Shown in pieces: positions 40,730 through 60,465 of a stretch of 63,856 nucleotides of DNA. How positions within the stretch are numbered: position 1 is the stretch's first letter; each line of letters begins with the position of its first letter. Origin of the DNA: Glycera tridactyla (taxonomy: Eukaryota). The notes below the pieces were generated by a model that ran no database searches, was not told where the DNA came from, and worked only from the letters and a program-made list of their open reading frames with translations. The stretch lies in the NCBI GenBank assembly GCA_965644265.1, contig OZ286465.1, positions 78,120,145-78,184,000 of the forward strand, read 5' to 3'. Both the position numbers and the translations under genes were made by a program.

Positions 40730-42364
40730 ATGAGGCTAGCCTGGGCCATCTTGGCCCTGTGTCAGACATTGATGATAGTGGCAGCATTCGAGGGTGAACT
40801 GCCTCCGGTATCCTACAGTCCTGCCTGGCACTTCTCACCCGACCATCACAGCCTGACATTCTCAGATCACAGAGAACATGTTAAAGTGACGGAGATTCTG
40901 ACAAATGTATTCTGCAATATGTCTCACGATCTAGAGAGAATTATCATAAAAGCACATGTATCATATATCAACCGGCGTGCCTTCGAAGGTCTACACTTCT
41001 TGTCTGTACTAGATCTATCACAAAACAAGATGGCTGGACTGCGACGGAATATGTTTCTCCCACTAGCAAACCTGAATACTCTCGTAATGAGGAATAATAG
41101 AATCAATGAGATAGAAAATGGTACTTTCAATGCACTTCGGCTTTTGAGGAAATTGGATCTATTCGGCAATCGTCTATCATATCTGCATCAAGGAATGTTA
41201 GTGGGTCTACAATACCTCCGTCATATTGAGCTTGGCGGAAATCTAGTTTCTGCTATCGAGGAGAACGCCCTACATAGCCTCATACATCTACATACAATTG
41301 AATTGCGTGACAACTCCATATGTTTCTTGATTTCATCTTGCCCTGTAGTCAATCCTCTACAAAATGTAGACAGTAGCAATCACAGCAGAGAAACCTCTTG
41401 CCATAAATTTGTGTCTTTGTTGAACTTGGACTCCAATTGCATAGACACAATTGACAAAAAGATGTTCACCCAAATGAGCCAATTGCGCACGCTCCAGATT
41501 GCAGATAATAGCATCATATCCATTGAGCTTGGCGCATTCAAGAATCTTGGAGTTTTAATTCATCTGGATCTGCGGGATAATGATATCAAGTGTTTATACC
41601 AGGGCATCTTTGAAGGTTTGGAGCACCTGGAAGTTCTGTACCTCAATGACAATAGAATTCACACAATAGAGAGGGGCTCATTGTCCAAGATGAATTTAAG
41701 TCTATTGGATCTAGGAAGCAACCCCATGGATATCTTATTGGAGTATGTATTCTCGGATCAGGTAGATTTTGAACATTGGTCTAGTGGGATCACATATTCT
41801 AGGTGGGCTAACAAGACACATATTTGCATCAATCATTACGCTTCTTCTCTTTGTAATCAGGAGCGATTCGGTACATGTAGATGCTACTTCCACGGGGACA
41901 GAAGCAACAAAATTCTCCTTCTGAACAAAAATCGTATGAAGAGCATACAGACTGGTGCTTTCCATGGTATCTACACCCACTTGCAGCAGATGGATCTATC
42001 AAATAATCTTCTCCAGAATCTCACTCGTGGTATGTTCTGGTACCTGCAAAGTCTTCAGATACTTCATGTCAGGAGCAACATCATTCATCATATTGGGAGA
42101 AATGCCTTTGAGGGCCTTGCAAGCCTGAAATACCTTAATTTGGAAAGGAATATGATTGAGGTCATCTCTGAGGACAATTTTGATGAGCTGTCATGCCTCC
42201 AGGTTCTTAGCCTTTGGAAAAATCATATTGTGCTCATGGTGCCCAGGGCGGTAGCTGGCCTCAGCCAGCTGTGCACTCTGTGTGTTAACTCCAACAAAAT
42301 CAAGCATGCACCACGCCTGCACACAGCTGCATCTCTCACATGCATCAATCTGTCCTACAATCAG
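40730..42364 (+). CDS. Signal peptide + extracellular leucine-rich repeats, exon 1
   Basis: MRLAWAILALCQTLMIVAA signal-like N-terminus. Many typical LRRs (LDLSQNKMAGL, LDLRDNDIKCL, LNLERNMIEVI). Donor aatcag|gtgagt, phase 0. Confidence 0.85.
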
Positions 42365-42540
42365 GTGAGTCCTTAAGGTGGTCTGATGACATGTATTGAT
42401 TGATAAACTTTATTACAAAAACAGAATGACATTGTCATATCAATTGCTCCAGTGGAAATGTAACACAAAGAGCAAAACTCAGGAACTCATTGTTAATCCA
42501 TGGTTGGTGTCTATCTCTTATCACATAATCAGATTTGTCC

Positions 42541-42712
42541 TCCACCCGTGACTAGCGTACTGGGCTGGCATGCAATTGGTCCAGGGTTCAATCCCAGGGC
42601 CCACCATGCAGGAATGTTTCACCCTTCATCTTCGCTCCTCCTTGGCAGGTGGTCCGATTTAGCCTACTCAAGTGCAGAAAGTGGACCTAAAACAACACCA
42701 TTTCCATTTTCC
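42541..42712 (+). mobile_element. tRNA-derived SINE copy
   Basis: B box GGTTCAATCCC at 42585 followed by ccaccatgcagga, shared with the copy at 51873. ATTTCC-type tail. Confidence 0.65.
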
Positions 42713-45609
42713 ACCCGTGACGAGTGAAGGACAGCTTTTCGCGGGGAGTGGAATCTGTCGAAGCGTCCTCCACTCTAGAAGCCGTCCTCCACTCTAGTTA
42801 CCGGAACTATTTGTTTCCTCCTGTTTCTCACATTCAACACTGAATATCATGTCAAATTTTCGTAGTTATTCTCATTTCTCATTAATGGTGATCATGAGAT
42901 GAATATTGGAGCAAAACTTGCTTGGAGGATGGTCTTGGACAGATCGCACTCTTTTGCATTGGTAGTACACACAACACTCGCCACTGCATGGCTCGTGTTG
43001 TATTTCTGTGCCTGCAAACTTGTGCGATCCGTCCAACTGTCCTCCACGCTTGTTTGCTCCTATCTATTCACCTCCTCAGTGATGGTCGGGGCATGTGTCT
43101 CCATCATTCTCTGGAGCTGTCCCAGCGGATAGATATCGGCTTTTCAACTGATCTGATGTTTTCTATTGGGCTAAGGTCGAATATTTGTCAGGTCTTGGAC
43201 ATAATCCGCTCCTACAACTTTCCTGTAGCTTCTGAATTTTATTTGTTCCTGGTTTTAGGCAGCTTTGATAATGTCCTGCTAACAAAGGTTAGGGAGTGGT
43301 CGCTGAGACCGACAGGTAATACTCCTGAGCGACTGTAATAGTCTTTTTGGAGACAATCACATGATAGCTGTCGCACTGAGGGGTGTTACCCATGTGGGGA
43401 CATCAATCAGTTGATCCAGGCCTCTATCACATAAAAACTTACTGAGATGCTTAACTTAACTATAGCTTGTTTTGCCATGTTTGATGTTATTGTCACCTAG
43501 AATTCAAGCGTCAGCAATTGTTTCGAACAAAGCACAATACATAAAACAATGCAATATATCATATTGTGCAAAGAAAACATCGTGTTCATGCCAATAGTGC
43601 TGGCACAGCCTTTTCGAAGCCGAGAGTAGTAAAGGGGGCACTATACAGGCAGATCAAGAGGTAGGGGCACTCTACGGGCATACGTTTTTGACACCGTTAT
43701 ATACACGTAGCTTTCTGAAGGAAGCGGGTAAATAGGATGTAGATGATCACCATGGATGAGTCCTGATTGGATACACTCTCACCAGTGACATGAAAGTGTC
43801 GTTGGATATGACTTCAGAGATGGCACCGTCTGTAAATGCTTTACTAGGTACTTATGTGCCAATTATTGATTGTAGATATGTCATTGCAATTGTTCCCTGT
43901 TGCTCCATGAACTATAGTATGGCCCATGTGCACTACACAAGTCGACTATGGGAAAGTTCAAGTCATGCCACAATTTTTTTCTTCTATTCTCAGCCATATG
44001 ACTGACAGGAATCCAAAATTATAGTCTTCTATGAGTGTCAGCTCCCAACCTAATACTTGTTAGATATGCTATCGATGGACTCATTCTCGTGTCTTTCCTG
44101 TCATCTATTTCCAATTGACGAATCTTTTTGTTTTCATTATCTTAAGTTCGGGATTCATGAGAGAGATTTGAGCAGGGCGTAGAGCATACAGCTCCCATAA
44201 ACCGAAAATAAATACATATTGTCTCCCCCTATACATGGCTTGAATATATACTCTTTTGAGTTGATAGGTGCAATTGGATCCAAACCGACCATCAACCAAT
44301 ATGGCGTCAGTATATCAGACAATCCGGGATCAAGCAGTCATCAACAACTACATCACCAGGCAGAGAATACCCTGAAAGAAATTCCCATCTTTTCAATGTT
44401 GAAATAGTCATCTTCTTTCCTCCAGAACCAGTAATCAAAAAAGAATTTGAGATATCTCGATAATGCCTCAATATGGTGCTATATTTCCCCTCTTCTCACT
44501 CAAAGAATCAGCATAGCATCAAACGTTCATCCTCAAGATGATTGGATTTGAAGTCAAAGTGTTGGGGGTTTCACTCACCTACCCATGGAGGACTCCCCTT
44601 TGGACCTATTTGCTCAGTAAGAGGAAATGCTCCATAGGCGTATGAATACATGTTCTCAATGTTCTCAACACTGATTGTTGGAATCAACCACACATATACT
44701 TTTTTTTTTAATACAGAAAAGGTTTCATTCCACATAGTCACCAGGACCATAGAACTGTCCCAATTGTGATTTCCAAGCTTGGCGCTTGGCCTAGCAAACA
44801 CCTATTAGGCCAGCACCGCTGTTATTACTTCGAAGTACAGAGAACGAGGTAGACACAAGATCCCAGTGGATGTAACCACGTGTGGCCATAAAGCAAGAGT
44901 CCCTGTTCATGGGGTGATCTGAAGGATTATGCATGCCATTTATTCCTGAGTTATGAAAGTTGGGTGTTCTGTCACCTGCAGCCACCATTCCTATGAACCC
45001 CGAACATGAGATGATTGGGAACTAGCAATATCGAGTGGGAGTAGCTTTTGGTTTCGACACACCACTACCTACTGACAATAAAGCAAATGAAGCGAACATT
45101 AGACGACCAAAATCCTCCGTAGTATTAAAGAAAGGAACATCGAGATGATGCTTTTTCACCTCTTTCTCTCTCTGTCCCTCCCTGTCTCCCCCTGTCTCCC
45201 CCTGTCNNNNNNNNNNNNNNNNNNNNNNNNNNNNNNNNNNNNNNNNNNNNNNNNNNNNNNNNNNNNNNNNNNNNNNNNNNNNNNNNNNNNNNNNNNNNNN
45301 NNNNNNNNNNNNNNNNNNNNNNNNNNNNNNNNNNNNNNNNNNNNNNNNNNNNNNNNNNNNNNNNNNNNNNNNNNNNNNNNNNNNNNNNNNNNNNNNNNNN
45401 NNNNNNNNNNNNNNNNNNNNNNNNNNNNNNNNNNNNNNNNNNNNNNNNNNNNNNNNNNNNNNNNNNNNNNNNNNNNNNNNNNNNNNNNNNNNNNNNNNNN
45501 NNNNNNNNNNNNNNNNNNNNNNNNNNNNNNNNNNNNNNNNNNNNNNNNNTACTATTGTAACACGACGCTCTTGATTATTTCCCGCCATCCACTTCTATCA
45601 TATCCTACT

Positions 45610-45849
45610 TCAATTAAATGTTGAAGAGTCTTTTTCTGGTCTGCTGCAATTGACGTTGATGCTTGGTTCCTGTAGATGTTTTCTAATGATTTCCAACCAT
45701 GTTGAATGGGTTCTTCTGACTGGTCTTTTCACTCTTCTAAGTGCTTCCTTGAGCAAGCGTCCTGCAGGAGAGTAATCATGGAGTCTTAGCAGATAGCCTA
45801 GCTGGTTGAGCCTACGCCTTATGATGGTCTTTCTCCACTGCGTCGTCAC
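45610..45849 (-). mobile_element. RTE-like LINE 3' coding fragment
   Basis: RRRLNQLGYLLRL...PAGRLLKEAL...KRPVRRTHSTWLEIIRKHL resembles the RT C-terminal RRRLRWLGH...RP.GRP..TW...I.KDL. Confidence 0.7.
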
Positions 45850-46063
45850 TTCATATAGTACGGCTTCTCAATGGTGAATTTCTTTTTATGTTTGATATCC
45901 ATTCGTTTACATCAATATGTTTCATATCACACTCGCTACATACGCATTGGAAGTTCTCAATCTGATTTGTGGACTGACCTTTTCGCCAGTAAGGACTGTG
46001 TTAAAGGTATTGAAGGCATCAAAGGCCAGTGGTTTTCTTCTTCGTTTATTCAATTTTCTCCAG

Positions 46064-46415
46064 ATAGAGGCGGTGCCAGTCGGCTATTTCGAGGATAATC
46101 ACCATCTGATCAGTCTTCACCTAAAACGGAATCATGTACAAATACTCAAGGCATTCTCATTCGTCAATTTAACAGCATTAACGAGTCTTACGCTTTCTGA
46201 AAATAGTATATCTGTCATCAACGAGCATGCATTTCAAGGACTTACTGCACTGCGTGAGCTTGAACTGGATAGAAATAGGATCCACGAAAGTGACTTTAGT
46301 GGGATACCACTCAGGTGTAAGCTGAATTTGAAGAGTAACAAGATCACAAGTTTGAGTCGACTTCGTGGACTACCTGGACGACTTGATGTATATAGTGCCA
46401 ATTTCTTCTCTGATG
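46064..46415 (+). CDS. LRR exon 2
   Basis: Acceptor caattttctccag|ATA, phase 0, gives LSYNQ|IEAVP, completing an LRR. LTLSENSISVI, LELDRNRI. Donor gatg|gtaag, phase 1. Confidence 0.85.
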
Positions 46416-46452
46416 GTAAGCTACATCTTGCATTATGAATTGCTTGATAATA

Positions 46453-46985
46453 GTAAGTAAGTAAGTAAGTAAGTAAGTATTCATTTATTTGACTTCGAAA
46501 GCACATCACAATTCATACAATATTAAAAATAATATGATGAGGTTGCAATGTTGCGCGGGACATCTCGAAGGATGCAACCATCCCGTTTCGAAGGTTCACA
46601 CAACTGAAATAACATACAATTCATTTCTCACTGGTTCATACATCAATTTTTACTCAAGAATCTTCCCTATCTAGTTACTCTCCGTTATCCATGATAGTAG
46701 TGCTGTCTTAAACTGATCCAATTGTTCAATTGTTCTTATACTTTCAGGTAGTAAATTCCAACACTTCGAGCCTTCTACTGAAAATGACTGCATACCAGCC
46801 CTACTTCTACTCATAGGCACAACAAGATCATCCCTACATGCTCCTCTAGTGACTCTTCCATGTCTCATGCTAAGTGGCTCAAATAGTTCATTCAAATACA
46901 CTGGTGCTAATTTTCGAATACATTTATATACAAGAATGAGCAGATGGTACTGGGTCAGTACATCGGACATGTTTGGGATCATTCA
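46453..46985 (-). mobile_element. 5'-truncated CR1/L2 LINE 3' end
   Basis: LVYKCIRKLAPVYLNELF...TRG...SFSVEGSKCWNLLPESIR...FKTAL, followed by aataaa and a (CTTA)n tail. Confidence 0.85.
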
Positions 46986-47044
46986 GGACTCCTGTTTCAG
47001 GGTCCCAAGCGAAAAGTTGATTGGTTGGTTAGCTGGAATTCGAT

Positions 47045-47412
47045 GGCATGTGTGTGTGTGTATGTGTGTGTGTGTGACCGAGAGAGTGAGAGAGTGAGTG
47101 AGAGAGAAAGTGAGTATTTGAATGTTGATCACTCTGTAAAACTAATTGTTATTTATCCCATTTGTTTCAGGCAGTTGGCTGCGGTATCCAAATTCTGCAG
47201 ATAGTCTGGGTCCCAGTATCATGCCATACACAAACGCTAGCGTGAATACATGCAGATTCTGTAAGTTAACATCCATCTCTCATTATTAATCGGGGTATAT
47301 CATCACGATCAAATTTCATGTTGCCACTTGAGATTGCTGAGAGAGGGTATGGTGAAAGGAGTGTGCCCTGGTTTACCCCACTTTTGGGTACTGCCCTGGA
47401 TTTCATTGGGGA
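47045..47412 (+). repeat. Dispersed repeat copy 2 (homologous to 2360-2630) with a ~120-bp insertion
   Basis: Alignment by eye breaks at ~47196 and resumes at ~47318. Confidence 0.8.
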
Positions 47413-48262
47413 CCCAGGACATGCCGGTCAAAGTATGGGGTATTGGTGACCTGTTTTTTGTTGTCTTATGGGCACTAACTGTTGATGTTAAGGAGGTTGC
47501 ATCGTAAAAGGAAAACCCATCTCTTGATCCTATTTTTGTGTGTGCCTCACAATATATATGTGAAGTATTGGAAAATGGAAGAAAAATTATTACTCGGATA
47601 TGGTGATCAGTGGATGCATAGATATCTGAGTTTTTAGTGAAAATGTGTTGCTTAATCCAAAGCACCATCGAGAAATCACACAATTGTCACGCATTTATCT
47701 GCATAACACCTGAAGAAACCCAACTTTGAGAGTTTGAAAAAATCAGGTGTCATGGTTCTTATGAATTGTCCACAAGACATTTTATCCCTGGTTATCTGGA
47801 TCAAGGGCGAGGAAATATCTTGAGGACACTGTGACCTATCCAGTGACAACATGTGTTATCTATCAGTGGGGGCAGTTGATGGATACATAATGAGTTTTAT
47901 GGCATCTCAGCTACCCTCACTGACCTTTGAACCCATACTGAAGCTGCGCAGTCTCGCTGTGCACTGACAATTCTCTGCAACCTTCATGAGATGTCCGAGC
48001 AGAGGTCAGTAGTGGATAATATCGGGTTTTTCTCTTCTACATCCTCAACTGCAGGTAAGCTGATATGAAAATCACAGAAAATCAGTGTTATTCCAGACAG
48101 CACTATGAAGAACTTTCTGGATGATAATGAAAGGAATTGCAGGTCTATTACATATGTAAATGCATCCCATAGGACTGTTTTGTATGTTTAACAATTTGAT
48201 GATTGGATTGTTTGCACAGGTAACACCAGATTGGATCACGTTAGTGTAAACCTTGCAAGTAA

Positions 48263-49270
48263 CCCCATAGACAAGAAGGAGATGATCTGTGGTTATTTCT
48301 GTAAGAGACCAGCTGTCATATTTGACATAGATTTTTCTCAAAAGTGTCCCGTAGGGAGACGGACATTCAGCATACACAACTGTGGTGAGTGAGTACCCCA
48401 TGATATCACACAACTGTTTTGAGTGAGTACCCTCATGATGTCACGCAACTGTAGTGAGTGAGTACCCCTCCATGACGTCACAGGACTGTGGTGAGTGAGT
48501 ACCGCCATAATGTCACACAACTGGACCTCCATGACTTCAAAGGGTGTGATGAGTGAGTACCCTCCCGTGATGTCACACAATTGTGGTGAGTGAGAACCCC
48601 CATGATGTCACACAACTTTGGTGAGTGAGTACCGCCATAATGTCACACAACTGGACCTCCATGACTTCAAAGGGTGTGATGAGTGAGTACCCTCCCGTGA
48701 TGTCACACAATTGTGGTGAGTGAGTACCCCATGATGTCACACAACTTTGGTGAGTGAGTACCGCCATAATGTCACACAACTGGACCTCCATGACTTCAAA
48801 GGGTGTGATGAGTGAGTACCCTCCCGTGATGTCACACAATTGTGGTGAGTGAGTACCCCCATGATGTCACACAACTTTGGTGAGTGAGTACCCCTCCATG
48901 ACGTCACATGACTGTGGTGAGTGAGTACCCCTCCATGATGTCACATGACTGTGGTGAGTGAGTACCGAATGATGTCACACAACTGTGGTGATCGAGTACC
49001 ACCCGCATGACGTCACACAACTGTGGTGAGTGAGTACTCACACCATGATGTCACACAAAGTTGGTGAGTGAGTACCTCTCCATGATGTCAAAGGAGTGTG
49101 GTGAGTAAGTACCCCCATGATGTCACACGACTCTGGTGAATTAGTACCCACTCCATGATGTCACATGACTGTGGTGAGTGAGTACCCACCTCCATGACGT
49201 CACACAACTGTGGTGAGTACCCCTCCATATTGTCACACGACCGTGGTGAGTGAGTATCCCCCTCCATGAT
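48263..49270 (+). repeat. Dispersed repeat copy 2: flank plus ~35-bp minisatellite array with a ~130-bp higher-order block x3
   Basis: Unit gtggtgagtgagtacccc..atgatgtcacacaact. The variant block ctggacctccatgacttcaaaggg starts at 48521, 48651 and 48780. Confidence 0.9.
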
Positions 49271-49659
49271 TTCAGCATGAGAGAAGAATACTCTCTCCAT
49301 GATGGCAGGGTATGACCCATCAATGGATATATGAACGAGCCAACTTACTGGGTGACTAGGCATATGAACCCATATTGGCCAGTATCTCTTATATATCGTT
49401 TATGTTTTCTGTCCCAGTTCAGATTTCTCTGAGCATTTTCACTTTCTATAACTTCGATGATGCTGTTCCTGAAGCAGGCCTCAAAACCAACACATTTGAG
49501 ATGCTTTTTCGAGACAAGAGATCAATTTTTTAGACATAACACATTGAAGGCGAATGTGACGCTAAAATGACTGTCCCATAAAACGTTTAAAGGTTCTCAC
49601 CCCAGTGGCCACGGGAATGTGCAAGCAGCATTGACTGCTAACAATTTCAGTGCTGACTG

Positions 49660-50070: not shown

Positions 50071-50108
50071 ACAAATGTACCCGCCACGATTAAGCTAGAC
50101 AGACTGTA

Positions 50109-53100
50109 TAGTCCAGGCACATATGTCACATATACAGATCCGAAAATTCTTGGCACCATACATTTTCTCGATCCTTAGCCATCAGAGTTTCAGAAGAAAT
50201 TGTTGCCATTTTATTCTGATGGTCAAAAGTGAATTTTTTCATGATTGAAAACTATCATTCAGAATCGCCAATAAAAAAATTCTTGGCATGGTTATAATTA
50301 CTGACAAATATGCCAATTTTGAGATAAGCTATGAATGTATTTCACAAAGAGAGATGGAGATATACATTATTGAGGACAATCTTGTAATTTTCATGCATAT
50401 TTCTGGTGAAAATATGGCTAAAGTATCATTGAAACTGATGCTTCTATACAATGTACACGAATGTGACATTTTCTCAAATATAGAGGGTATTGATCAGTTC
50501 ACTTCACAAAGAAAGGGCTGTATATTATTACAAGAATCTCCCAATGAATAATTGGATTACAAGAAACCTTTGATGAATGATTGGTGAAACTCTATCAATC
50601 ATCATCATAGAAATAGTATACAATGCATCTTATGGTACCCAAGAAAACATAACACTTTCACAATTTTTTTCTATATCGCAAACTTTTCAGTCATCTGTTT
50701 TATCTAAATCTGTGCCATTATCACTCTGGCCAAAGTAGTGCAAAATGGTAATATCACAGGTTCCTTCTGAACCCTCACATCTGCACAATTTGGTACAGAT
50801 CATGTTCCGTCAACAGCATCGAAATCTGTGAACTGAGCACTTGTTGGAAGAACAACCACACGTAGCCATCTAGAGTAGCAAATCTGGAGCAGGTTTAGAC
50901 AAATTTTTCACTGGTACACAAGAGATGTCTATCCCTTCTCTACTCTATTTCATCCATAGTTTTCGAGTGATTGAAATGTTCATACTGGTGTGCATTTATT
51001 GCACCATATCATGGCTATGTTGTATGCTTGGAGTATCCCATACCATGGAGTACCTTCAGTTTGTGTTAGCTTCTCAGCTCCAGCATTTGACTGCCTGAAT
51101 AAAAGCTATCAGAGCTGGCCAACATCCTTCAGTTTCTCAGCTTGTATAGGAGAATTCTGGAACTGAAATCCTTTTCTGCAACAAACTCAGTCATCCCAGG
51201 TATGGTTGGCATAGCAGGTTTGATTGCTATCCCCGGTCAAAGATCCTGTAGTGTCTGTTCCTGTGGAGCAGACAAAGTTCTGGAAGTACGGCAACCATAT
51301 CCTCAATGCATTCAGGGATATCTGCCCCAGTTCATCAATCAAATCAATCTGTTGCTAGGATAAAAACATCAGTATCTGGAAAAAACAAGTCTACTGAAAA
51401 CCCTGCTTTGTTTTTATCCACAGAGTGCAATTACAACATTATATCGCCTTCTTGTGTACTGATGAGGTGACCAGCAATGGTGTGAAGCAATTTTGTGCCA
51501 CTTGCTTTTGTGATGACTGCAGTCTTGCTGCCAGTTTTGAATGTTTCCTGCAGAATATTCTGTTGGACTAGCTTTAGTTTTGAAATTGTCCAAGATGTCA
51601 GATATTGGTATTCTGATTGGTGTAGCCCCACTGCAGATTACTTGGTTTCTGTTTTTTTCCTTCTCTTTGATTGTTGGCTTTCAGTGAGTGTTCACTGCGA
51701 TGGTCAAACACAACATAAGGCAATCGTGTTTTTGGGATTTGTGTTTCTGAAAACCAAACAAGTAAGATGCTCAATCCTATCGATATTTGATGTCATGCTC
51801 CCTATTGATTCATTGTTAATCATTACCATTCCATCAAATATCAATGCTTTTGGCTTCCCTTACATAGAAGCCTGCCTTGGTGGCTCAGCGGTAGCATGCT
51901 GGGCCACCGTGCAATGGGCCTGGGGTTCAATCCCCGGTCCTACCATGCAGGAGCAGTTTTTTCAGCATCTGACAAGGCGAAGGTGCAGAGTGGAGAATCT
52001 GCTGCCTGTGATACACAGGGACCAATCAAAATCAAGATGCTCCCTCGTAGTCATCAGCATTGATACTCAATGTGAAGCCCCATCAAGGAGAGAATTTATG
52101 AAATTCAGACATTCAAGGTGTCATATATGGGTCCTCATCCATTGATATATCTCACATTTTCTCAAGAACTTTCGAGGGTAAGGGCTTATTGTTCCTGTAT
52201 CCATACATACTTCAGCAATATCATTGGCTCCCTTCACCCAGCTGGATTAAGCACGAAACTGTATGAACACGATTTATCTGTGGTATATAAGGGAGGTTGA
52301 ATGGACATTGAATAGAATAAGTTTCATCACAGTCACTTGTTCTAACATGGGATCTCATCAGGCCCCAATCATTTTGATATTTGGGGAATATTCCAAGAAG
52401 GAGATGAGTAGTGGAATGAATCCTTCTGATGGCCCTTTTGCTCAATTTCCATGATGGATAGAATTTGTTCAACACATCAGACTAGATACAGGTACCACAA
52501 GATCATTTCTAAATGAAAATATGTTCATGACAGTGCTAAGACAGTGGCAATTTTGTGAGGAGCAGATTGAGAGATGATGACATAGGAAAATTTGCGAGCA
52601 AATTCTCCAAAAATTTATTCAGTGTGGCTTGCCTATAAGTGAGATCTTCAAGGCCTTCCGTGAGCTTCATTCTCTTGTTTCCTTGATCAACAGCATTATC
52701 TGATCCTATGATTATGAATGCAATATGGTTCTTCTTTACCCAGAAGTTGCCTCGAATGAATGTATCCTAAGGAGGATGTTTTATGAACCCCAGCTTATTG
52801 AATTTACCAAGATATCATGGTAGATGCGGTGCATACTGGAGTCTATTCTGAGAAGAATAAGTGAAGCAATTTTCTCAACGATTCTAGATAGGCAAGTCAA
52901 AGTCCTCTCTTTGATCCCTCATTGAATACCACCGATATACTGACAAAGTAATTCGTGCACATCAGGAGTCTTTTTTAGTTTTCCTCAGGCTGACAAGTGC
53001 TCTTTTGTGGTATTTCTTCCCATCATGACGGCAGTTAAAGCCTGATCAAGAGATTCATGAAGCTGTGACATATTATGCAGATCAGGCATCATTTCCTCCC

Positions 53101-53637
53101 TGACAAGGAGGTCATGAACTGCTTTCTATATTAGACAGTGAGCATCCATCACAGATCTGTCTTGTTGTAATTAGTCCAAAAGGCCCAGCTTCATTCCTGT
53201 TCATTCCACTGCATCTAATCAGTGATCATGATGCTCTCACAGCACAAAATACTGTATGTCATTCACCTATACATGGCATCAGATTAATGAAGTGAACTAA
53301 TCACGAAAAAACAGTCACATATAATCATCAGTTACATAATAAAAATAACAAAATCATGCATGAATATGTTTATTCCAAATATATACTGATAGAATATATT
53401 GGTAGCCATCATAATAAATGCTCTATTTGACAAGATGTTTGAGTACCCCTCCAAAATGAGATTTCTCGATGGCGTTTTTCAGTGATGTTATTCAAACATT
53501 GAAAAAGTCACTTTAGTGCATTAGAAAAAAATGGCACCAAAACTTTTCTGAAACTCTGATGCCTAAGGATCAAGAAAATGTATGGTGCAAACAATTTTCA
53601 AACGGAACAAAATTGAATCACATATACGCCTCGAATA
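50109..53637 (-). mobile_element. Academ (XPG + Cys-rich, AcademX-type) DNA transposon remnant with ~175-bp imperfect TIRs
   Basis: TIRs 50109-~50285 and ~53460-53637, left end starting TAG. Decayed minus-strand motifs: NRLQYAPHLP*YL, RGNFWVKKNHIAF..IGSDNAVDQGNKRMK..EGL (transposase); STQEGDI..LH...PDTDVFIL and TGTDTTGSL (XPG/H3TH); EKLTQTEG...QAYNIAMIW; PAPDLL..CGC..KC...C...MICTKLCRC (Cys-rich). Confidence 0.8.
51873..52010 (+). mobile_element. tRNA-derived SINE inserted in the Academ remnant
   Basis: A box TGGCTCAGCGG at 51881, B box GGTTCAATCCC at 51924, then taccatgcagga. Confidence 0.7.
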
Positions 53638-54430
53638 CATATTCCATACAACAAATTTCATGCTGTCAATGTCACATAGTGTGAAAAGATTATTAAGTGA
53701 TTTAATGGGGTTGAAAATGTCACATCTTTATTCAATTGCCAGGTAAACCAGATGAGAGGGCACTTCATCCAACACTTATCCTTTGTCACACGCTATGTAG
53801 AATGTCTTTTGGGCGTTGTACCAATCCCCGTACCTCTATTTCTAAGGGGAGTATGCCACATGAGACTCACTTTGTGCATGACTTTGAGCTTCATGTATTT
53901 TCAGGACTCTGGGTTTCCCATGCTTTCCCCATATCTAGTGGATATCTAATCTCCAGTTTTACCCAAATAGATTTGATACTAAGTTATGAGCTGATAATTC
54001 CAATATATCACTTAGCCAGCCATACTGCAGGTTTGACTCATTTCAGTGATACAGATTCTTTTGTGGTCAGTTGTTATCCATTCTGACTGCTAACTACTGT
54101 AGATGTAAGTATTTACTGCAGATAGCTGTGCAGATCCGAGTGTTGCCAAAAAACATCTAACTATGCACCCCAGGTGCTGAGTAATCCATGAGGGCCCAGC
54201 CTGCTGCTCTGTTAGTTAGGTGACAGGGGGGGGGGGGGATATGACTTACATGGTGTGTTTTGTTGCTGGCTGTAGCTGATATATTTTGACTGCACAAAAA
54301 TGTTCATCCTCTACATTTGTGCCCGTGTGCGCGCATGTATATGTCTGTGCATGTGTTTGTCTCACCAAAAAGGTTATGATTATCGGTCAAATCAGTGGAA
54401 TCAAGGCAGGGAGATATGACTGGCTTGCAG

Positions 54431-56571
54431 GGAACATATCTGTCGTGGAGAGGCTTATGGAATGCGTCAATCGGCGGCTAATGGGGAGTACTTCACGGAC
54501 TACTCTTGATGTAATGATCTACAAGTTGATGAGATCTGCCAACTATGAGGACAATTATGAGATCATCAGTATGCTGATGGTTGTGTTTGGGGTAACTCAG
54601 CGATTGCTAATCCAATGTAATAATCCGGCTTCCGTTGCTGGCCATCTCACCAAAGTGTGTGGCTCATTGCAACTGCCCAACGATTCTCACACTACGTCAT
54701 CCTTGGTGATATCGCTGGTCGAAGGTCACTCCTTGAATCTCTACATGCAGCACTTCCGGTTGACCTACTCTCCTAGCTGTAAGGTCAATTATCTAGAGAT
54801 GCGACGTCATCAGTCATGTGACATGCACCACCGTTACTGTGGATACCTACCACCCTGGAATGAGACTAGTCCAACATCTCGAGTAACACTCTCACTGACC
54901 AGGCAGTGGCCACATGATTCTGTTCAGATACAACTTAGATATGATGTGCGCAAATCCTGGGTCATGCTGGTTCATCATCATCTGTATTTGACTGTGGGAT
55001 ATACTCTTCATTCTACAGATCCATACCCCCGTCACACAGAAATCAAGCACCAAATACAGATTCTGACTGAGTATGACTCGATCATTCAAATAAAGACTAT
55101 TTTTTGGACAAGTTGGAATCTTATTCTCTTCGATGAGCCGGGCCGGTTAGCCGGGCTGTTGGAGGATGCCCTGTCTTCTTCACATCGACTTCAAATCTGC
55201 TACCAGGCAGAATATTTCTCAGAATTTGGACATGACAGGGTTTATATTGAGCGCGTTCGTTCACCAGCTAGCATTCAAAATGGATGGCTTATTGTGAATA
55301 CTACAATCACACAGTCTTACTATCGTGTGCTTATTCCTATATTTGGATCAAGTAAGACCAGTGCTAGAATTCTGGTTCACCAATACAATACCGTCGGATA
55401 CCAAGAGGGAGAATGCAAATATGCTGGTAAGGTCATCATGGATGATAGGATCGAATATGGCCCCTTCTGTTCATACAAGCATTACTCTATGTATTCTGTT
55501 ACTGGGATTTCTCTTACTCTCAAAAATGGGCATCTGGTAATTTACACTTATAGGCCTTATGCATACATGATGCTGATGTTGGAGACAGAACCTGTCCTAC
55601 AAGCCAGAAGGGATATAGTTATTCCTCTTTGGATTCATAGTGCTTTCCTAAAATCTGATCTATTTTATCAGAGGCTTTGTTGGAATATATCAGATAAAGC
55701 AGAAACAATGGTTGCCCTACCGTCAGGATTACCAACAACAAGACAGCCTTACCTACTCATCCATATCAACCACTACTTCTTGTATGCTATGAGACACATG
55801 GTCTTGATTCCTAAGTCATCATATTGCACAGCATGTCCTCTGATGGAAGAGACTCGAGGTTTGGATTTACGGATCAACATTTCTAGTAAGTGCTCGTGTT
55901 TTGAACCAATACTCCTCTTGAGTGCAGATCGGAATAGACACAGTCTCCTCACGGGACATTCTTGTCCCAGTCACATCTCACCTTTCCAACCACAGAATAT
56001 ACTATGCCAGATCTCATCAAATGTGTCTGTCACAATTGCTACTATCAAAGTGCACGATGATGGTTTCACGTTTGTGAAGTTCACGGCTTCATCCCAGGCT
56101 TGGGTATATTTGATGATTCAGTCGGATACAGTTGGAAAATATAGTTCCAAGCCCAGAACCAAGAAATTCATCCTACAGGATTCATTGAGCTGGAAATCAG
56201 AGTACACTTTTCTCAACATGAGTATGACTTTATGGGAAGGTGCCCTCACTTACGTGAATATCAGTTTCCACTCAAACACTTTCACATACTGCTCACAGGG
56301 AATACGATCCTACTCAACAAATCGCCTTACAATCCACATGGCATCAGTGACCAGTGCCAAAAATACTGAAATTTGTATCGGTTATCGATGCTATTTGATC
56401 ATCAATGCATACAGACTGTCATGGATTGAAGCTGAGAGGATGTGTAGTGCATGGAACAGCACCTTGGTTAGCATTAATAGTTATGAAGAGCTTGACATAG
56501 TAAGACACATACTACGTAGATATGTACCAGAGACCATATCATATTTGTTCATTGGATTAAAACAGATGAGG
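54431..56571 (+). CDS. GRL101-like receptor ectodomain exon (CUB-like segments + N-half of C-type lectin)
   Basis: Stop-free for >800 codons. YCGYLPPWNET and CKYAG...YGPFC (CUB-like). CYLI...SWIEAERMC...LVSINSYEE...FIGL (CTL). Donor atgagg|gtgagt, phase 0. The 5' acceptor (cttgcag| at 54430, phase 1) is inferred. Confidence 0.75.
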
Positions 56572-56599
56572 GTGAGTTGCCTATTCAGACATAAGTGTC

Positions 56600-56601
56600 G
56601 T

Positions 56602-56633
<32 letters not shown>

Positions 56634-56720
56634 TAAATATCGTCATCATCATTGTCGTCAACATCGTGGTCATCACCACCCCACCATCTTCATTGTTGTT
56701 GTCTTCGTTGTCGTCGTCAT
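56600..56720. repeat. Intronic CAT/CAG/GTC trinucleotide repeats
   Basis: Direct reading; lies downstream of the 56571 donor. Confidence 0.85.
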
Positions 56721-57064
56721 CATGACAAACACCGCCATCCCCAGACCACCCTGAAACATACACACCATGATTGACAAAATGAGGATGATCGTGTCTTATC
56801 ATATCCAAGTGAATGAACAGACAAAAGATGAGACCATATACTGAAACCCCTCTCAACTATACTTCTCAACATTGGACCTTATTTCAGATGTCACTCTGCA
56901 CTTGTGTTGGTGTCTGTCAGATGCCTTCGCAATGGTTATGAGTGAGGATATTCAAGACATCACCTGCTGATTTCTCGAGGAAGGTGAAAAGTCTGATAAA
57001 TGGGCATGCAATGGATATTAGTGAGAAGAATGAGCAGCATCATTACTCTCAGACCTTTAGCTGT

Positions 57065-57212
57065 AGTCGTAGCTAACAATTGCCAACGTTCTGTAATGGA
57101 AACAGGACCCCCCCATCTCGTTTTATGACACTCAAGATAAAGATTATTTGATAGGGAATTTTGTTGAACGTTTCCTTTGTTAGCTCAACTGACCAGCCTG
57201 CTGATTGCACTC
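57065..57212 (+). repeat. Dispersed repeat with an inverted copy at ~60890-61035
   Basis: Shared tgtaatggaaaca...tgttagctcaactga(c/a)cagcctgctgat. Confidence 0.75.
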
Positions 57213-57240
57213 ATTTCACCACCTGATTTATATGTTACAG

Positions 57241-60200
57241 GGTACCCTTGGCTGGACTGATAACAGGGCATTGAGTATATCACAAATTAATGAATACATT
57301 CTGATGAACACAACTCACATTTACAAAGACAAGGCCCTGACTGCTCATGATTGGATATCAGAAGTGATACAGGGAGATGCACACAGATATAATATCACAT
57401 TAGCTTGCCACTTTTTGTGGCTTCATTCACCCCATATACAGTTCATGCCCTGGATCAGAATCTCCTGTACAAAACAGTTCTACGTGAAATACATCATCTG
57501 TGAACATGAGAGAACTACCTCATTCCAGGCCTTAACAACGATCAGTGGGACATCTGCTGTCCCAGGAGACCCCAGAACAAAGGATGAGATATTGACTATC
57601 CTGAGATATACCACTCGCAAATGCAACAAATACTGGACATACATCAATGGACAATGTTACAGAGTAATGCAGGGGAGGAAAGACAGTCTGGAAAATATTG
57701 CTGAGTATCCGATAGATGTTAATATGGCGGTGAGTGAGAGGAGACGGGTATGGCACCACATAATCAATTACCTGGAGGATTATGTGACACATCAAGTGAA
57801 GCATAGAAAATATATCGTGATGAGAATTCACGGTCAGTGTGCCTCATTGGTGAGGACACAGAGCGCATCAGGTAGCATCTGGCGTCGAGTTACCGACTGC
57901 TCACTCATGCTGCAGGCTGGCTTCATGCTCCATACAAAACATGACCTCTGCTCTGCTGACCGAGATTACTTCATTCGGCAATTCATCAAATCTCCAACAA
58001 TCAGGAATATACCACATGCCTATGTGCTCCCACGATATGACACTGAGGTGGTCAATTCAGACAGAGCACATCTGCAAATGTCTGCCTACCTAGCAAAGCT
58101 TCATCCGAAGGAGCAAGGGAGAGGCATAGGGTTCAAAATCACTGATGGTAAGAATGCCACATCAGGTTCAAAATTGTGCTCAATATTATATCCATCTGAT
58201 GTGGGAGATCCGCCATCCTGGCGATCCCATAGCCAAACTATTAAATGCCATCATCTTGAATATATCTTGGGCAAGACAGGAGTCATTGGGTCGAATTCAA
58301 AGCAAGGTATGTGTCCAGTGAATTATATCAGATGCTCCGATGGCAGCTGCATATCACAAAGACGACGTTGTGATAACAGCATCGATTGTTTGGATGGTTC
58401 TGATGAGAGTGATTGTCCAATGATCTGCACAAGGTCGGACCAGACAAGATGCAGAGCAGAGTGTCAATACCCAGCGTGTAGATGTTCTGACTTACATCAC
58501 CAATGCTCAGGCAGTGGTTGCATATCCATGTCTAGAGTATGTGACCAAGTAATTGACTGTTTGGATGCCTCGGATGAATACTGCTGCTCAGAACAGATGT
58601 TTGAAATTCATGGAGATGTTGAGCAACATATTACGAGCCTGCCAACAGATGATGCATGTCTCTTCAACAGAGTAGAACTACTCTCTCCAGACCAGGATAT
58701 TCACCTTAGATGCTGTTCAAATCATGAATGTCCAGGAATGTACAAATGTTATGACTCATATTGCATCCCATACCGTTATGTCTGCGATGGCCTGAGAGAT
58801 TGTCCAGCAGGAGAAGAAGAACTTCAATGCAACTTGCTCGTATGTCATGGAATGCTGAAATGTATTGAAGATGCTATCTGCATCGCCTGGGAAGAAGTGT
58901 GTGATGGGATCAAACATTGCCAGATGTCTGGTGATGACGAGATGCTGTGTGATTTACCATCATGCCCCAAAGGTTGTCTTTGTGTTGGCTTAGTTGTCAT
59001 ATGCACTGCTAAAAATCTCACATCAATGCCCACATATCACATGTTTACAAAGTCATATGACATGTCGAGTAACATGATAACGTTAGGTCCAAATGAATTT
59101 GAAGGCCAATCCTGTCCGCTGAAACTGATTCTGCGGAATAACAAAATCACTGAAATTCACACAGCTGTATTCTCCAAACTAGACAAATTGCAAGAATTAG
59201 ACATCTCAATGAATGATATCTCAGTGGTTGGACAAAAGTCGTTTCTGGGTCTGATCTCCTTACGCATTATATCCCTACAGAACAACAACATTAGGACATT
59301 GGAGAGATGTAGCTACATAGGCCTGCCTAGATTACACATTCTTGACTTGAGCAAACAGAGGATAGCAATAATATTTCCTTCAACCTTCCATGGATTGGAG
59401 TTCCTCTTTTATCTCAATCTATCCAACAATCTTATAACACACATAGCATTGCACCTATTTGAGGGTCTGCATAGATTAGAAGTGATCGACATATCAAACA
59501 ACCCAATAGCCTACTTCCATAGTGATTCACTGGTCGGACACACCTCAATACAGAATGTTTATTGCACACTACCAGAGTTGTGCTGTTTTATCCCTCCACA
59601 AGTTGTTTGTGGAATGCAAGAGGTGTATCATCTATTCTCATGTGGGTTGTTAATTCCTAGCACTGAATTGAGAATAGTGATATATATCATGGGCCCCATG
59701 GTGCTGACTGTGATTATGATGACATATATAAGCAGGCATCATTTGCAATCCAAGAAAAGTGATCAGACTCTAGGTGGCGAGCTCTATCTTATCACATCTG
59801 ACTGCATGATAGGGCTCTATCTCATCGAGATGCTGATCACGGATGGCTTATACAAGGACCAGTTTCCACTACATGTCAGCAGCTGGAGGACTGATATCCA
59901 ATGTAAAGCTGCTGGATTTCTTGTCTCATTCCACTTCTCTGGTGGAATCCTGTCGACTTTGGTTATTGCTTTGGAGTGGTTTGTTATAGTCTTCTTTCCT
60001 TTCAGGTCCAAAGAAATGATTGGCTCCTTCAAAAAAATGATACCATTGTGTCTCATCCTGAATGTTGGCTTGTCATCTTTAATTTCAACTTTGTTGTCCA
60101 CAGCCACAGACACATGTGTGTTTCTCATGTCCGATATCAATGACATGACTGATATGACAGTCATCTTGCTACCAGTTGTTGGTGATTCTGTTCTACTTGT

Positions 60201-60465
60201 ATTGGCCGCCATTATCATGGGGTCATCAAGATGGATTGTGTATGATGTACGAAGGACTTCCGGTCGTCAACAGACACATCAGGAAACAATACTCACTATT
60301 CGGGTCTGTCTCCTAAATGTCTGTAACTTTCTCAGGTGGTCGACTTCAGTGTTCGGGGCAATCATCACACTCAATGACCTGCCCATCTCCGAGGTTGCCA
60401 TCTTCTGGGTATTGATTTGTGTTCTGTCGCCACTGGCAATAACAAGATCACTTTTGCTTGGTTAA
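57241..60465 (+). CDS. GRL101-like LGR terminal exon: CTL C-half, 4 LDLa, LRRNT + LRRs, hinge, 7TM
   Basis: Acceptor tgttacag|GGT, phase 0, gives FIGLKQMR|GTLGWTD. LDLa examples CSDGSCISQRRRCDNSIDCLDGSDE. CPKGCLC cap, LRRs, ELCC hinge. LGR-type SDCMIGLYL...WRTDIQCKAAGFL. Confidence 0.9.
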   Translation, partial: GTLGWTDNRALSISQINEYILMNTTHIYKDKALTAHDWISEVIQGDAHRYNITLACHFLWLHSPHIQFMPWIRISCTKQFYVKYIICEHERTTSFQALTTISGTSAVPGDPRTKDEILTILRYTTRKCNKYWTYINGQCYRVMQGRKDSLENIAEYPIDVNMAVSERRRVWHHIINYLEDYVTHQVKHRKYIVMRIHGQCASLVRTQSASGSIWRRVTDCSLMLQAGFMLHTKHDLCSADRDYFIRQFIKSPTIRNIPHAYVLPRYDTEVVNSDRAHLQMSAYLAKLHPKEQGRGIGFKITDGKNATSGSKLCSILYPSDVGDPPSWRSHSQTIKCHHLEYILGKTGVIGSNSKQGMCPVNYIRCSDGSCISQRRRCDNSIDCLDGSDESDCPMICTRSDQTRCRAECQYPACRCSDLHHQCSGSGCISMSRVCDQVIDCLDASDEYCCSEQMFEIHGDVEQHITSLPTDDACLFNRVELLSPDQDIHLRCCSNHECPGMYKCYDSYCIPYRYVCDGLRDCPAGEEELQCNLLVCHGMLKCIEDAICIAWEEVCDGIKHCQMSGDDEMLCDLPSCPKGCLCVGLVVICTAKNLTSMPTYHMFTKSYDMSSNMITLGPNEFEGQSCPLKLILRNNKITEIHTAVFSKLDKLQELDISMNDISVVGQKSFLGLISLRIISLQNNNIRTLERCSYIGLPRLHILDLSKQRIAIIFPSTFHGLEFLFYLNLSNNLITHIALHLFEGLHRLEVIDISNNPIAYFHSDSLVGHTSIQNVYCTLPELCCFIPPQVVCGMQEVYHLFSCGLLIPSTELRIVIYIMGPMVLTVIMMTYISRHHLQSKKSDQTLGGELYLITSDCMIGLYLIEMLITDGLYKDQFPLHVSSWRTDIQCKAAGFLVSFHFSGGILSTLVIALEWFVIVFFPFRSKEMIGSFKKMIPLCLILNVGLSSLISTLLSTATDTCVFLMSDINDMTDMTVILLPVVGDSVLLVLAAIIMGSSRWIVYDVRRTSGRQQTHQETILTIRVCLLNVCNFLRWSTSVFGAIITLNDLPISEVAIFWVLICVLSPLAITRSLLLG

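What the first reader, a model, noticed from the sequence alone, without database searches (positions are those of the whole stretch)
40730..60465. Possible single ~2450-aa receptor: SP-LRR array-CUB-like-CTL-LDLa x4-LRR-7TM
Seen in sequence: the LRR exons carry a signal peptide but no TM segment or stop, and exon 2 ends in phase 1 at 46415. The GRL101-like ORF has no signal peptide and has a phase-1 acceptor (cttgcag|) at 54430. Joining 40730-42364, 46064-46415, 54431-56571 and 57241-60465 gives 7353 nt, i.e. 2451 codons in one frame. Established: Lymnaea GRL101/type C2 LGRs are LDLa-LRR-7TM. Inference: a second, N-terminal LRR solenoid plus a lectin would make an unusually composite pattern-recognition or chemosensory GPCR, perhaps built by exon shuffling.
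Basis: partly seen in the sequence, partly recalled or inferred. Interest (0 to 1): 0.75.

Follow-up and report, generated by a model that had tools for sequence, protein, structure and literature searches.

The report
Giant mosaic LRR-CUB-lectin 7TM receptor gene
The upstream leucine-rich-repeat exons and the downstream receptor exons most likely form one six-exon gene for a ~2,535-residue mosaic membrane receptor, one of 60 to 100 or more rapidly diverging copies in this invertebrate genome, with a membrane part that has lost the usual G-protein switch motifs.

Summary
All four claimed exons are open, their phases and splice sites are as stated, and 7353 nt is right. The assembly gap (45207-45549) lies inside intron 1.

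The single-gene reading is supported by comparative evidence, not by RNA: no RNA run was listed.
- 50 of 59 paralogous CUB/lectin exons in this genome have LRR exons upstream on the same strand.
- The upstream exon-1 homologues start with a signal peptide. The CUB/lectin exons never do.

- exon A, 47171-47260;
- exon B, 48220-48384, the last LRR plus a 4-Cys cap.

Both are phase 1-1 in the window, in paralogs and in a contig of another species. There, exon B lies only 237 nt from the CUB exon.

The revised model has six exons, 7608 nt, 2535 aa.

Relatives in Lingula and in a metaclust sequence have CUB-lectin-LDLa-LRR-7TM without the N-terminal LRR block, so that block is a lineage-specific addition through phase-1 introns.

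In this subfamily the 7TM has W in place of the E/DRY arginine, has no NPxxY, and stops right after TM7. Canonical G-protein coupling is therefore doubtful.

First readers of this scan noted similar receptors elsewhere in this genome (s1-320844, s1-333407).

The parts
40730..42364 (+). Coding exon 1: start codon, signal peptide, and two blocks of typical extracellular LRRs separated by a Cys-rich knot (545 codons; ends in phase 0)
   Evidence: Open frame. LRR_8 6.4e-63 in 8 stretches. Donor CAG|GTGAGT. Homologous exon-1-like ORFs in 7 paralog loci all start with Met plus a signal peptide and share the L.(F/L)SDS..H.VT motif. dN/dS 0.49-0.52 against the two 85% copies.
45207..45549 (.). Assembly gap, inside intron 1 (42365-46063)
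   Evidence: The N run is flanked on the left by a CT-rich simple repeat. No family-like coding piece is seen in the readable part of the intron. The gap was not filled.
46064..46415 (+). Coding exon 2: about 4.5 more LRRs; ends in phase 1
   Evidence: LRR_8 3.1e-21. Acceptor ttttctccag|A and donor ATG|GTAAGC. A strong phase-1 donor sits at the homologous place in 8 paralog loci and in L029.
47171..47260 (+).
   Evidence: Conserved tblastx block among distant paralogs. Acceptor tttgtttcag|GC and donor TTCT|gtaagt. It has the same phases and a length that is a multiple of 3 (81-102 nt) in L021, L023, L025, L028 and L029.
48220..48384 (+). Coding exon B (new): 165 nt, phase 1-1; the last LRR plus a 4-Cys cap (CG.FC.RP ... 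CP ... CG) that closes the N-terminal LRR solenoid
   Evidence: Conserved block. Acceptor ttgcacag|GT and donor TGTG|gtgagt. The TGTG|GT donor is in phase 1 in all 6 loci examined. exB-like matches lie between exon 2 and exon 3 of 7 other paralogs.
48374..49274 (.). 35-nt satellite (about 26 copies) in the intron; its unit begins inside the exon B donor region
   Evidence: Tandem Repeats Finder; blastn self-matches.
54431..56571 (+).
   Evidence: Open from 54433. CUB and Lectin_C are above the Pfam cut-offs. It has no usable Met or signal peptide. A 17-sequence alignment shows invariant Cys, Trp and Gly residues. The AF2 model is low-confidence and all-beta; its best fold matches are multi-CUB proteins. 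There are 59 or more paralogous loci.
57241..60465 (+).
   Evidence: Pfam. The LRR plus 7TM part is collinear with RXFP1 chain 7tmw_R. The 7TM alone matches LGR-type receptors (8w1z_A 4e-6, LHCGR 0.009). Motif losses and a conserved stop position are shared by the subfamily. dN/dS of the 7TM is 0.31-0.38.
60643..60648 (+). AATAAA, a candidate polyadenylation signal 178 nt after the stop
   Evidence: Read directly from the sequence; function is inferred.

Best explanation
One protein-coding gene on the + strand with six coding exons: 40730-42364, 46064-46415, 47171-47260, 48220-48384, 54431-56571 and 57241-60465. Together they are 7608 nt and give 2535 aa.

The product is a membrane receptor with its N-terminus outside. 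In order it has:
- a signal peptide;
- a long N-terminal LRR solenoid, closed by a 4-Cys cap;
- a helical linker;
- a CUB domain followed by several CUB-like beta-sandwiches;
- a C-type lectin domain;
- four LDLa modules;
- a second, membrane-proximal LRR block;
- a seven-helix bundle of the LGR (relaxin / glycoprotein-hormone receptor) type.

It belongs to a lineage-specific family, clustered in tandem, with at least 59 CUB/lectin exons and at least 129 7TM matches. The core CUB-lectin-LDLa-LRR-7TM is older: it occurs in Lingula and in a metaclust sequence. The N-terminal LRR block was added between the signal peptide and the CUB region through phase-1 introns.

Inferred mechanism. The mosaic ectodomain binds an external macromolecular cue, such as a glycan, protein or lipoprotein-like ligand from the environment, a conspecific or a microbe. 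By analogy with type C LGRs, the signal would pass through the LDLa/LRR/hinge region to the helix bundle. This subfamily has lost Arg3.50, NPxxY, helix 8 and the C-terminal tail. Output is therefore probably not classical G-protein activation, and the bundle may act as an anchor or signal through partners.

Shown: exon structure, domain content, family size, motif losses, and purifying selection. Inferred: that the exons are spliced together, the ligand class, and the signalling mode.
For: (1) Order and strand. 50 of 59 exon-3-like loci have a short LRR ORF upstream on the same strand within 130 kb. Chance expectation is about 0.003 per locus. None has one only downstream.

(2) Splice phases. 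Exon 2, exon A and exon B all end in phase 1 with good GT donors, and exon A, exon B and exon 3 all start in phase 1. This holds in the window, in paralogs that are only 25-47% identical, and in L029 from another genome.

(3) No stop ends the LRR part before these donors. The read-through tails differ in length and sequence.

(4) The distance from the exon B donor to the exon 3 acceptor is only 237 nt in L029 and 505 nt in L021. That leaves no room for a terminator, a promoter and a signal-peptide exon.

(5) Exon-1-like ORFs always start with Met plus a signal peptide. Exon-3-like ORFs never do. A scan for signal-peptide mini-exons found none in 4 of 9 loci and nothing conserved in the rest.

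(6) dS is similar in all parts against the two close copies (0.10-0.20), so the LRR and receptor exons duplicated together. dN/dS is below 1 everywhere.

(7) Domains were identified.

(8) L029 is at most 32% identical to any copy in this genome, so the exon chain predates the split of the two species.
Against: There is no transcript evidence at all. No RNA run was listed, so read laying could not be used.

The annotated or assembled relatives (Lingula LOC106174476 and metaclust P0087) carry their own signal peptide directly before the CUB region and have no N-terminal LRR block. A two-gene layout is therefore biologically possible.

In the window itself the intron from exon B to exon 3 is 6 kb and holds a satellite.

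The assembly gap in intron 1 could hide an exon.

Pfam 7tm_1 does not recognise the tail, and the homology of the 7TM alone is weak (E 4e-6 to 0.04).

The AF2 model of the CUB/lectin exon is of low confidence (pLDDT 54.9).
Confidence: 0.8

Rival explanations
1. There are two neighbouring genes that always duplicate as a pair. One is a secreted LRR protein (exons 1, 2, A and B, ending in an unseen last exon or by read-through). The other is a separate CUB-lectin-LDLa-LRR-7TM receptor with its own undetected signal-peptide exon.
For: The Lingula and metaclust relatives start with their own signal peptide just before the CUB region. There is no RNA evidence. The intron before 54431 is 6 kb. A few weak candidates of the form ATG, hydrophobic stretch, phase-1 donor exist in that interval.
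Against: The phase-1 chain is conserved through four exon borders in all loci examined. Exon B lies 237-505 nt from the CUB exon in compact copies. No conserved signal-peptide exon was found, and 4 of 9 loci have no candidate at all. The LRR part has no conserved stop, transmembrane segment or tail. The tails that follow if splicing fails are not conserved.
Confidence: 0.1
2. The locus is a decaying, non-functional copy. The 7TM has lost its switch motifs and C-terminus, so the long frame is a recent relic.
For: Arg3.50 is replaced by Trp, there is no NPxxY, and the protein ends at TM7. Pfam 7tm_1 fails. Relic fragments of exons A and B lie upstream in the same window.
Against: There are 2535 codons with no stop or frameshift across six exons with good splice sites. 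dN/dS is 0.31-0.52 in exon 1, the CUB/lectin exon and the 7TM (0.62-0.80 in exon 2). The same motif losses, and a stop at the same alignment column, are shared by copies that are only 27-30% identical (C28, C39, C18). The truncated form is therefore old and maintained.
Confidence: 0.05
3. It is one gene with regulated isoforms. Because exons A and B are symmetric (phase 1-1), skipping them gives the reader's 2450-aa form. Intron retention after exon 2 or exon B gives a short secreted LRR protein.
For: Skipping keeps the frame (arithmetic). In-frame stops follow both donors closely, at 46436-46438 and 48388-48390.
Against: Nothing speaks for it beyond frame arithmetic. Skipping exon B would remove the conserved Cys cap of the LRR solenoid.
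Confidence: 0.05

Closest known systems
Lingula anatina LOC106174476 (uncharacterized protein, 2042 aa; P0090) and its 40%-identical metaclust relative P0087
   Same: The order is the same: CUB, a long beta-rich stretch, Lectin_C, 3-4 LDLa, LRR, then a rhodopsin-type 7TM. P0087 matches exon 6 at E 1.9e-21.
   Different: They have a signal peptide directly before the CUB region and no N-terminal LRR solenoid. Their 7TM is recognised by Pfam 7tm_1 (2.3e-31 for P0090). Identity to the window protein is only about 24%.
Type C LGRs: relaxin receptors RXFP1/2 (structure 7tmw) and Lymnaea GRL101
   Same: LDLa module(s), then LRRs, then a hinge, then an LGR-type 7TM. The LRR plus 7TM part aligns collinearly with RXFP1 residues 212-669. 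It shows the TM2-TM3 signature W.T...C.aAGFl.
   Different: GRL101 has about 12 LDLa and 6 LRRs, nothing else in its ectodomain, and is usually single-copy (PMC8286064). The window protein has 4 LDLa plus CUB, lectin and a second LRR solenoid, has more than 100 paralogs, and has lost Arg3.50, NPxxY and the C-tail.
Asterias rubens LOC117296560 (2734 aa; P0091) and other mosaic 'GRL101-like' receptors of deuterostome invertebrates
   Same: A very large mosaic ectodomain (CUB, Lectin_C, LDLa, LRR) on an LGR-type 7TM.
   Different: It carries other added modules (kringle, F5/8 type C, EGF) and no N-terminal LRR solenoid. Its 7TM is canonical.
Expanded LRR pattern-recognition or chemosensory receptor families (Toll-like receptors; tentacle-enriched GRL101-like genes of Charonia and Acanthaster)
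   Same: The N-terminal LRRs are of the typical extracellular class, closest to ALS, TLR3/13 and LGR4/5. The family is large, tandemly clustered and fast-evolving. GRL101-like genes are reported as enriched in sensory tentacles (PMC13403566, PMC6267866).
   Different: There is no TIR domain or other known signalling domain. Expression of this family is unknown. The cited papers propose chemosensation only as a hypothesis.

Membership tests
Type C LGR (LDLa-containing leucine-rich-repeat GPCRs) | One or more LDLa modules N-terminal to the LRR block | tested here: met
   Ldl_recept_a 5.5e-18, three stretches above threshold, and a fourth by cysteine pattern.
Type C LGR (LDLa-containing leucine-rich-repeat GPCRs) | A capped LRR ectodomain directly before the 7TM | tested here: met
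   LRR_8 1.9e-25. LRRNT gives 18.3 bits, below the 25.8 cut-off. The region is collinear with RXFP1 chain 7tmw_R residues 212-669.
Type C LGR (LDLa-containing leucine-rich-repeat GPCRs) | A rhodopsin-class 7TM of the LGR clade | tested here: inconclusive
   Pfam 7tm_1 gives no hit at E<=5. phmmer against PDB gives 8w1z_A at 4e-6, LHCGR at 0.009 and RXFP1 at 0.038, with seven aligned helices. More distant paralogs align well with canonical members.
Type C LGR (LDLa-containing leucine-rich-repeat GPCRs) | G-protein switch motifs E/DRY (Arg3.50) and NPxxY, plus helix 8 and a C-tail | tested here: not met
   E-W-F stands in place of E/D-R-Y/F. R-S-L-L-L-G stands in place of NPxxY. The stop comes directly after TM7, with no splice donor there.
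GRL101 orthologue (type C2 LGR) | An ectodomain made only of about 12 LDLa and about 6 LRRs | tested here: not met
   There are 4 LDLa, with CUB, lectin and a second LRR solenoid in addition. The definition is taken from PMC8286064.
GRL101 orthologue (type C2 LGR) | A single-copy or low-copy orthologue | tested here: not met
   At least 129 matches to the 7TM part and at least 59 CUB/lectin exons in this genome.
CUB-lectin-LDLa-LRR-7TM mosaics (Lingula LOC106174476 type) | Domain order CUB ... Lectin_C ... LDLa ... LRR ... 7TM | tested here: met
   Exons 5 and 6 give this order. The same order is found in P0087 and P0090.
CUB-lectin-LDLa-LRR-7TM mosaics (Lingula LOC106174476 type) | A signal peptide directly preceding the CUB region | tested here: not met
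   The CUB exon has no start codon or signal peptide and enters in phase 1. Four LRR exons precede it.
C-type lectin domain | A complete CTLD (both halves) | tested here: inconclusive
   The N-half is above the Pfam cut-off (24.8 against 22.6 bits). The C-half, in exon 6, gets no Pfam hit on its own and is recognised only by eye (GWTD motif, terminal Cys pair). The joined domain was not searched.

The most novel reading that the evidence does not exclude
This would be a large, lineage-specific family of LGR-derived receptors that have given up G-protein coupling: Arg3.50 changed to Trp, no NPxxY, no helix 8 or tail. They would use a double-LRR / CUB / lectin / LDLa ectodomain as a diversified recognition surface. 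In effect this is a 7TM-anchored pattern-recognition or chemosensory repertoire that signals by a non-canonical route.
Probability: 0.3. Interest if true: 0.75.

Novelty: new variant of a known kind. Interest (0 to 1): 0.55.

Why it matters
Mosaic 'GRL101-like' receptors are widely annotated in invertebrates but remain orphan. Here the architecture goes further in three ways: a second, capped LRR solenoid has been added through phase-1 introns, the family has grown to about 60 to more than 100 copies, and part of it carries a 7TM without the switches needed for G-protein activation.

If these copies are expressed, they are candidates for a diversified recognition repertoire, immune or chemosensory. 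They would also be a clean natural example of domain accretion by exon shuffling, and of a class A 7TM scaffold reused without canonical coupling.

There is a practical point as well. Gene models that take only the two giant exons will miss about 750 N-terminal residues and the signal peptide. Another first-reader note on this genome does take only those two exons.

Tried and rejected
- RNA evidence. The look-up of sequencing runs (kind rna, 54431-60465) listed no run.
- Word-index protein search with the CUB/lectin exon gave no hit in the 392-1248 aa range.
- The exhaustive HMMER search gave only 85 hits. The best are bare about 700-aa exon ORFs from unannotated contigs, so no annotated full-length model was available for comparison.
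- A scan for signal-peptide mini-exons between exon 2 and the CUB exon found only low-complexity or unconserved candidates, and none in 4 of 9 loci.
- tblastx blocks C (about 52194-52280) and D (about 54309-54362) contain a stop or are low-complexity, and I rejected them as exons.
- ORFs of 100 aa or more inside the introns, on both strands, have no Pfam family.
- A possible further exon after the stop at 60465 was rejected: there is no GT donor at the conserved stop in 11 copies.
- The AF2 model of the CUB/lectin exon is of low confidence (pLDDT 54.9). I used only the general result 'multi-CUB-like beta-sandwiches'.
- The Atlas feature search gave only sub-threshold CUB and lectin leads.
- The species behind GCA_013332675.1 could not be found in the paper library.
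- Every search was made exon by exon by reference, so the split lectin domain and the whole protein were not searched or folded as one piece. The assembly gap was not filled or looked up in other copies.

Full report
**Observation**

- 40730-42364 gives 545 codons. It starts with Met and a hydrophobic signal-peptide-like stretch and contains eight LRR_8 stretches (6.4e-63).
- 46064-46415 adds more LRRs.
- 54431-56571 is closed in frame 1 but fully open from 54433, that is, in phase 1. It carries a CUB domain and the N-terminal half of a C-type lectin domain, both above the Pfam cut-offs.
- 57241-60465 is open to a TAA. It carries LDLa modules, LRRNT/LRRs and a hydrophobic seven-helix tail.

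The splice signals are good:

| Border | Signal |
|---|---|
| 42364 (donor) | CAG\|GTGAGT |
| 46064 (acceptor) | ttttctccag\|A |
| 46415 (donor) | ATG\|GTAAGC |
| 54431 (acceptor) | cttgcag\|GG |
| 56571 (donor) | AGG\|GTGAGT |
| 57241 (acceptor) | ttacag\|GG |

The sum of 7353 nt is right.

**The assembly gap**

The N run 45207-45549 lies inside the intron between exon 1 and exon 2, so no reading frame has to cross it. Its left flank is a CT-rich simple repeat. No family-like coding piece is seen in the readable part of either intron. One leucine-rich repeat reads smoothly across the exon 1/exon 2 junction (L..I.L..NQ | I..VP...F). An extra in-phase LRR exon hidden in the gap cannot be excluded.

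**One gene or two: family evidence**

The window is G000:C17:78120145-78184000 in a 2.04-Gb assembly.
- A six-frame search with the CUB/lectin exon finds at least 59 paralogous loci at 23-33% identity, plus two copies at 86%.
- Searches with exons 1 and 2 show LRR ORFs upstream of these loci on the same strand. I tallied this from the printed coordinates. 50 of 59 loci have such an ORF within 130 kb, often within 2-15 kb. About 0.003 per locus is expected by chance. None has one only downstream.
- In eight compact paralog loci fetched for a closer look, the exon-2-like ORF always carries a strong GT donor in phase 1 at the homologous place. An unconserved tail and a stop follow it. The CUB/lectin ORF always has a pyrimidine-rich AG acceptor in phase 1 and no usable start codon or signal peptide.
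- The exon-1-like ORFs all begin with Met and a signal peptide, and share a motif with the window's exon 1.

A tblastx comparison of the supposed exon 2 to exon 3 introns among distant paralogs showed two collinear conserved coding blocks.
- Exon A is 47171-47260 (90 nt; tttgtttcag|GC ... TTCT|gtaagt; motif GSW...PN....LGP).
- Exon B is 48220-48384 (165 nt; ttgcacag|GT ... TGTG|gtgagt). It encodes a last LRR and a four-cysteine cap (CG.FC.RP ... CP ... CG).

Both are phase 1-1, and their lengths are multiples of three wherever both borders could be placed: the window, L023, L028 and L029 for both exons, and L021 and L025 for exon A. In L021 and L025 no phase-1 acceptor was found for exon B.

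L029 comes from another genome (NCBI GCA_013332675.1). Its CUB/lectin exon is at most 32% identical to any copy here. In L029 the exon B donor is only 237 nt from the CUB-exon acceptor. In L021 the distance is 505 nt. That leaves no room for a terminator, a promoter and a signal-peptide exon.

A heuristic scan for signal-peptide mini-exons in this interval found none in four of nine loci and nothing conserved in the others.

The revised model is therefore six coding exons, 7608 nt, 2535 aa. It would, however, delete the cap of the N-terminal LRR solenoid.

**Selection**

I compared the window with the two close copies on the same chromosome. dS is similar for exon 1, exon 2, the CUB/lectin exon and the 7TM (0.10-0.20), so all parts were duplicated together. 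dN/dS by part:

| Part | dN/dS |
|---|---|
| 7TM | 0.31-0.38 |
| CUB/lectin exon | 0.39-0.47 |
| Exon 1 | 0.49-0.52 |
| Exon 2 | 0.62-0.80 |

This is a coding sequence under relaxed purifying selection, and the outer ectodomain evolves fastest.

**What the parts are**

- The N-terminal LRRs belong to the typical extracellular class. The best solved relatives are ALS, TLR13/TLR3, LRRC15 and LGR4/5.
- About 480 aa between the CUB domain and the lectin domain have no Pfam family.
- An AlphaFold model of the exon, built with a 17-sequence alignment, has low confidence (pLDDT 54.9). It is all-beta after a 60-residue helical start.
- Its best Foldseek matches are multi-CUB proteins: cubilin CUB5-8 at 1e-6, neuropilins, C1r/C1s and MASPs. 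I take this only as 'probably several CUB-like beta-sandwiches'.
- The C-half of the lectin domain is recognised only by eye. The two halves were not joined for a search.
- The membrane-proximal LRR plus 7TM part aligns collinearly with the relaxin receptor RXFP1 (7tmw_R residues 212-669).
- The 7TM alone matches LGR-type receptors weakly but specifically (8w1z_A at 4e-6, LHCGR at 0.009, RXFP1 at 0.038). Pfam 7tm_1 does not hit it.

**An atypical helix bundle**

The genome holds at least 129 matches to the 7TM part, mostly in intact ORFs of 1060-1230 aa. I aligned 21 paralogs with the window and a canonical insect GRL101-type receptor.

The window's subfamily consists of copies on C17, C28, C39 and C18 that are 27-30% identical to each other. 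It shows three changes:
- E-W-F stands where canonical members have E/D-R-Y/F.
- There is no NPxxY.
- The stop falls at the same column right after TM7. The stops are real, because no splice donor overlaps them.

More distant paralogs keep ERY/ERF, NPxxY and a tail. From established knowledge of class A GPCRs, Arg3.50 and Tyr7.53 are central to G-protein activation. Canonical coupling is therefore doubtful for this subfamily. The shared, conserved nature of the losses and the low dN/dS argue against simple decay.

**Relatives elsewhere**

The exhaustive HMMER search with the CUB/lectin exon found only 85 proteins in 1.84 billion. The best are bare exon-sized ORFs from unannotated contigs.

Exon 6 finds a 1742-aa metaclust protein (P0087). 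Its annotated 40%-identical relative is Lingula anatina LOC106174476 (2042 aa). Both have a signal peptide, then CUB, Lectin_C, LDLa, LRR and a Pfam-recognised 7TM, with no N-terminal LRR block. An Asterias protein adds kringle, F5/8C and EGF modules.

So the core architecture is known but uncharacterised. What is new here is the capped N-terminal LRR solenoid, the family size and the altered 7TM.

The true GRL101 has 12 LDLa, 6 LRRs and a 7TM, and is usually single-copy (PMC8286064). This gene is not its orthologue.

GRL101-like genes have been reported as enriched in sensory tentacles of a triton snail and a starfish, with chemosensation proposed as a hypothesis (PMC13403566, PMC6267866). 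This is a lead only.

**Mechanism**

The best-supported reading is a surface receptor whose mosaic ectodomain binds an external macromolecular cue. By analogy with type C LGRs, the LDLa/LRR/hinge region would relay binding to the helix bundle. Since the switch motifs are lost, the bundle may instead serve as an anchor or signal through partners.

The family size, the tandem clustering and the faster evolution of the ectodomain fit a recognition repertoire, immune or chemosensory. All of this is inference. Splicing itself is inferred from comparative evidence, because no RNA run was listed.

**Limits**

- There are no transcripts.
- There is a gap in intron 1.
- The fold model is of low confidence.
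- Family counts are lower bounds.
- The species is not disclosed. An earlier follow-up note of this scan calls it a worm-like invertebrate, which I did not check.
- The spliced model was never joined for any tool, and all searches were made exon by exon by reference.
- Other first-reader notes on this genome (s1-320844, s1-333407) describe similar receptors on other pieces. The first describes one as about 1900 aa in two giant exons, which my family analysis suggests is an underestimate.

Noticed in passing
window 48374-49274: A 35-nt satellite of about 26 copies has a unit that begins with the last bases of exon B and its GTGAGT donor. The exon-intron junction is therefore repeated many times downstream. 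The later copies lie behind an in-frame stop.
   Followed up: partly
window 26445-26585 and 2381-2655: These are relic copies of this gene's middle part. One is an exon-B-like piece, 64% identical in protein and 84% in DNA, with one cap cysteine changed to Trp and the same satellite after it. The other is a copy of the flanks of exon A plus its first seven codons. They lie 24 kb apart, with no CUB or 7TM exons near them.
   Followed up: partly
window 37792-38946 (+): A 385-aa ORF with a zf-RVT domain (2.6e-08), a retrotransposon remnant, lies just upstream of exon 1.
   Followed up: no
G000:C18:101.54-101.70 Mb and 103.75-103.96 Mb: Two clusters of family members appear to be near-identical segmental duplicates. 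For example, L023 and L024 have the same exon ends and introns, and hits are paired throughout. Some members carry stops and are probably pseudogenes.
   Followed up: no
window 46452-46476: A (GTAA)n microsatellite lies about 35 nt after the exon 2 donor.
   Followed up: no
L029 (NCBI GCA_013332675.1, JAAUYI010175150.1) 1-7092: A 7-kb contig of another species holds exon-2-like, A, B, CUB/lectin and LDLa exons in the same order and phases. The prokaryote-style gene calls on it split the gene into separate small 'proteins'.
   Followed up: yes
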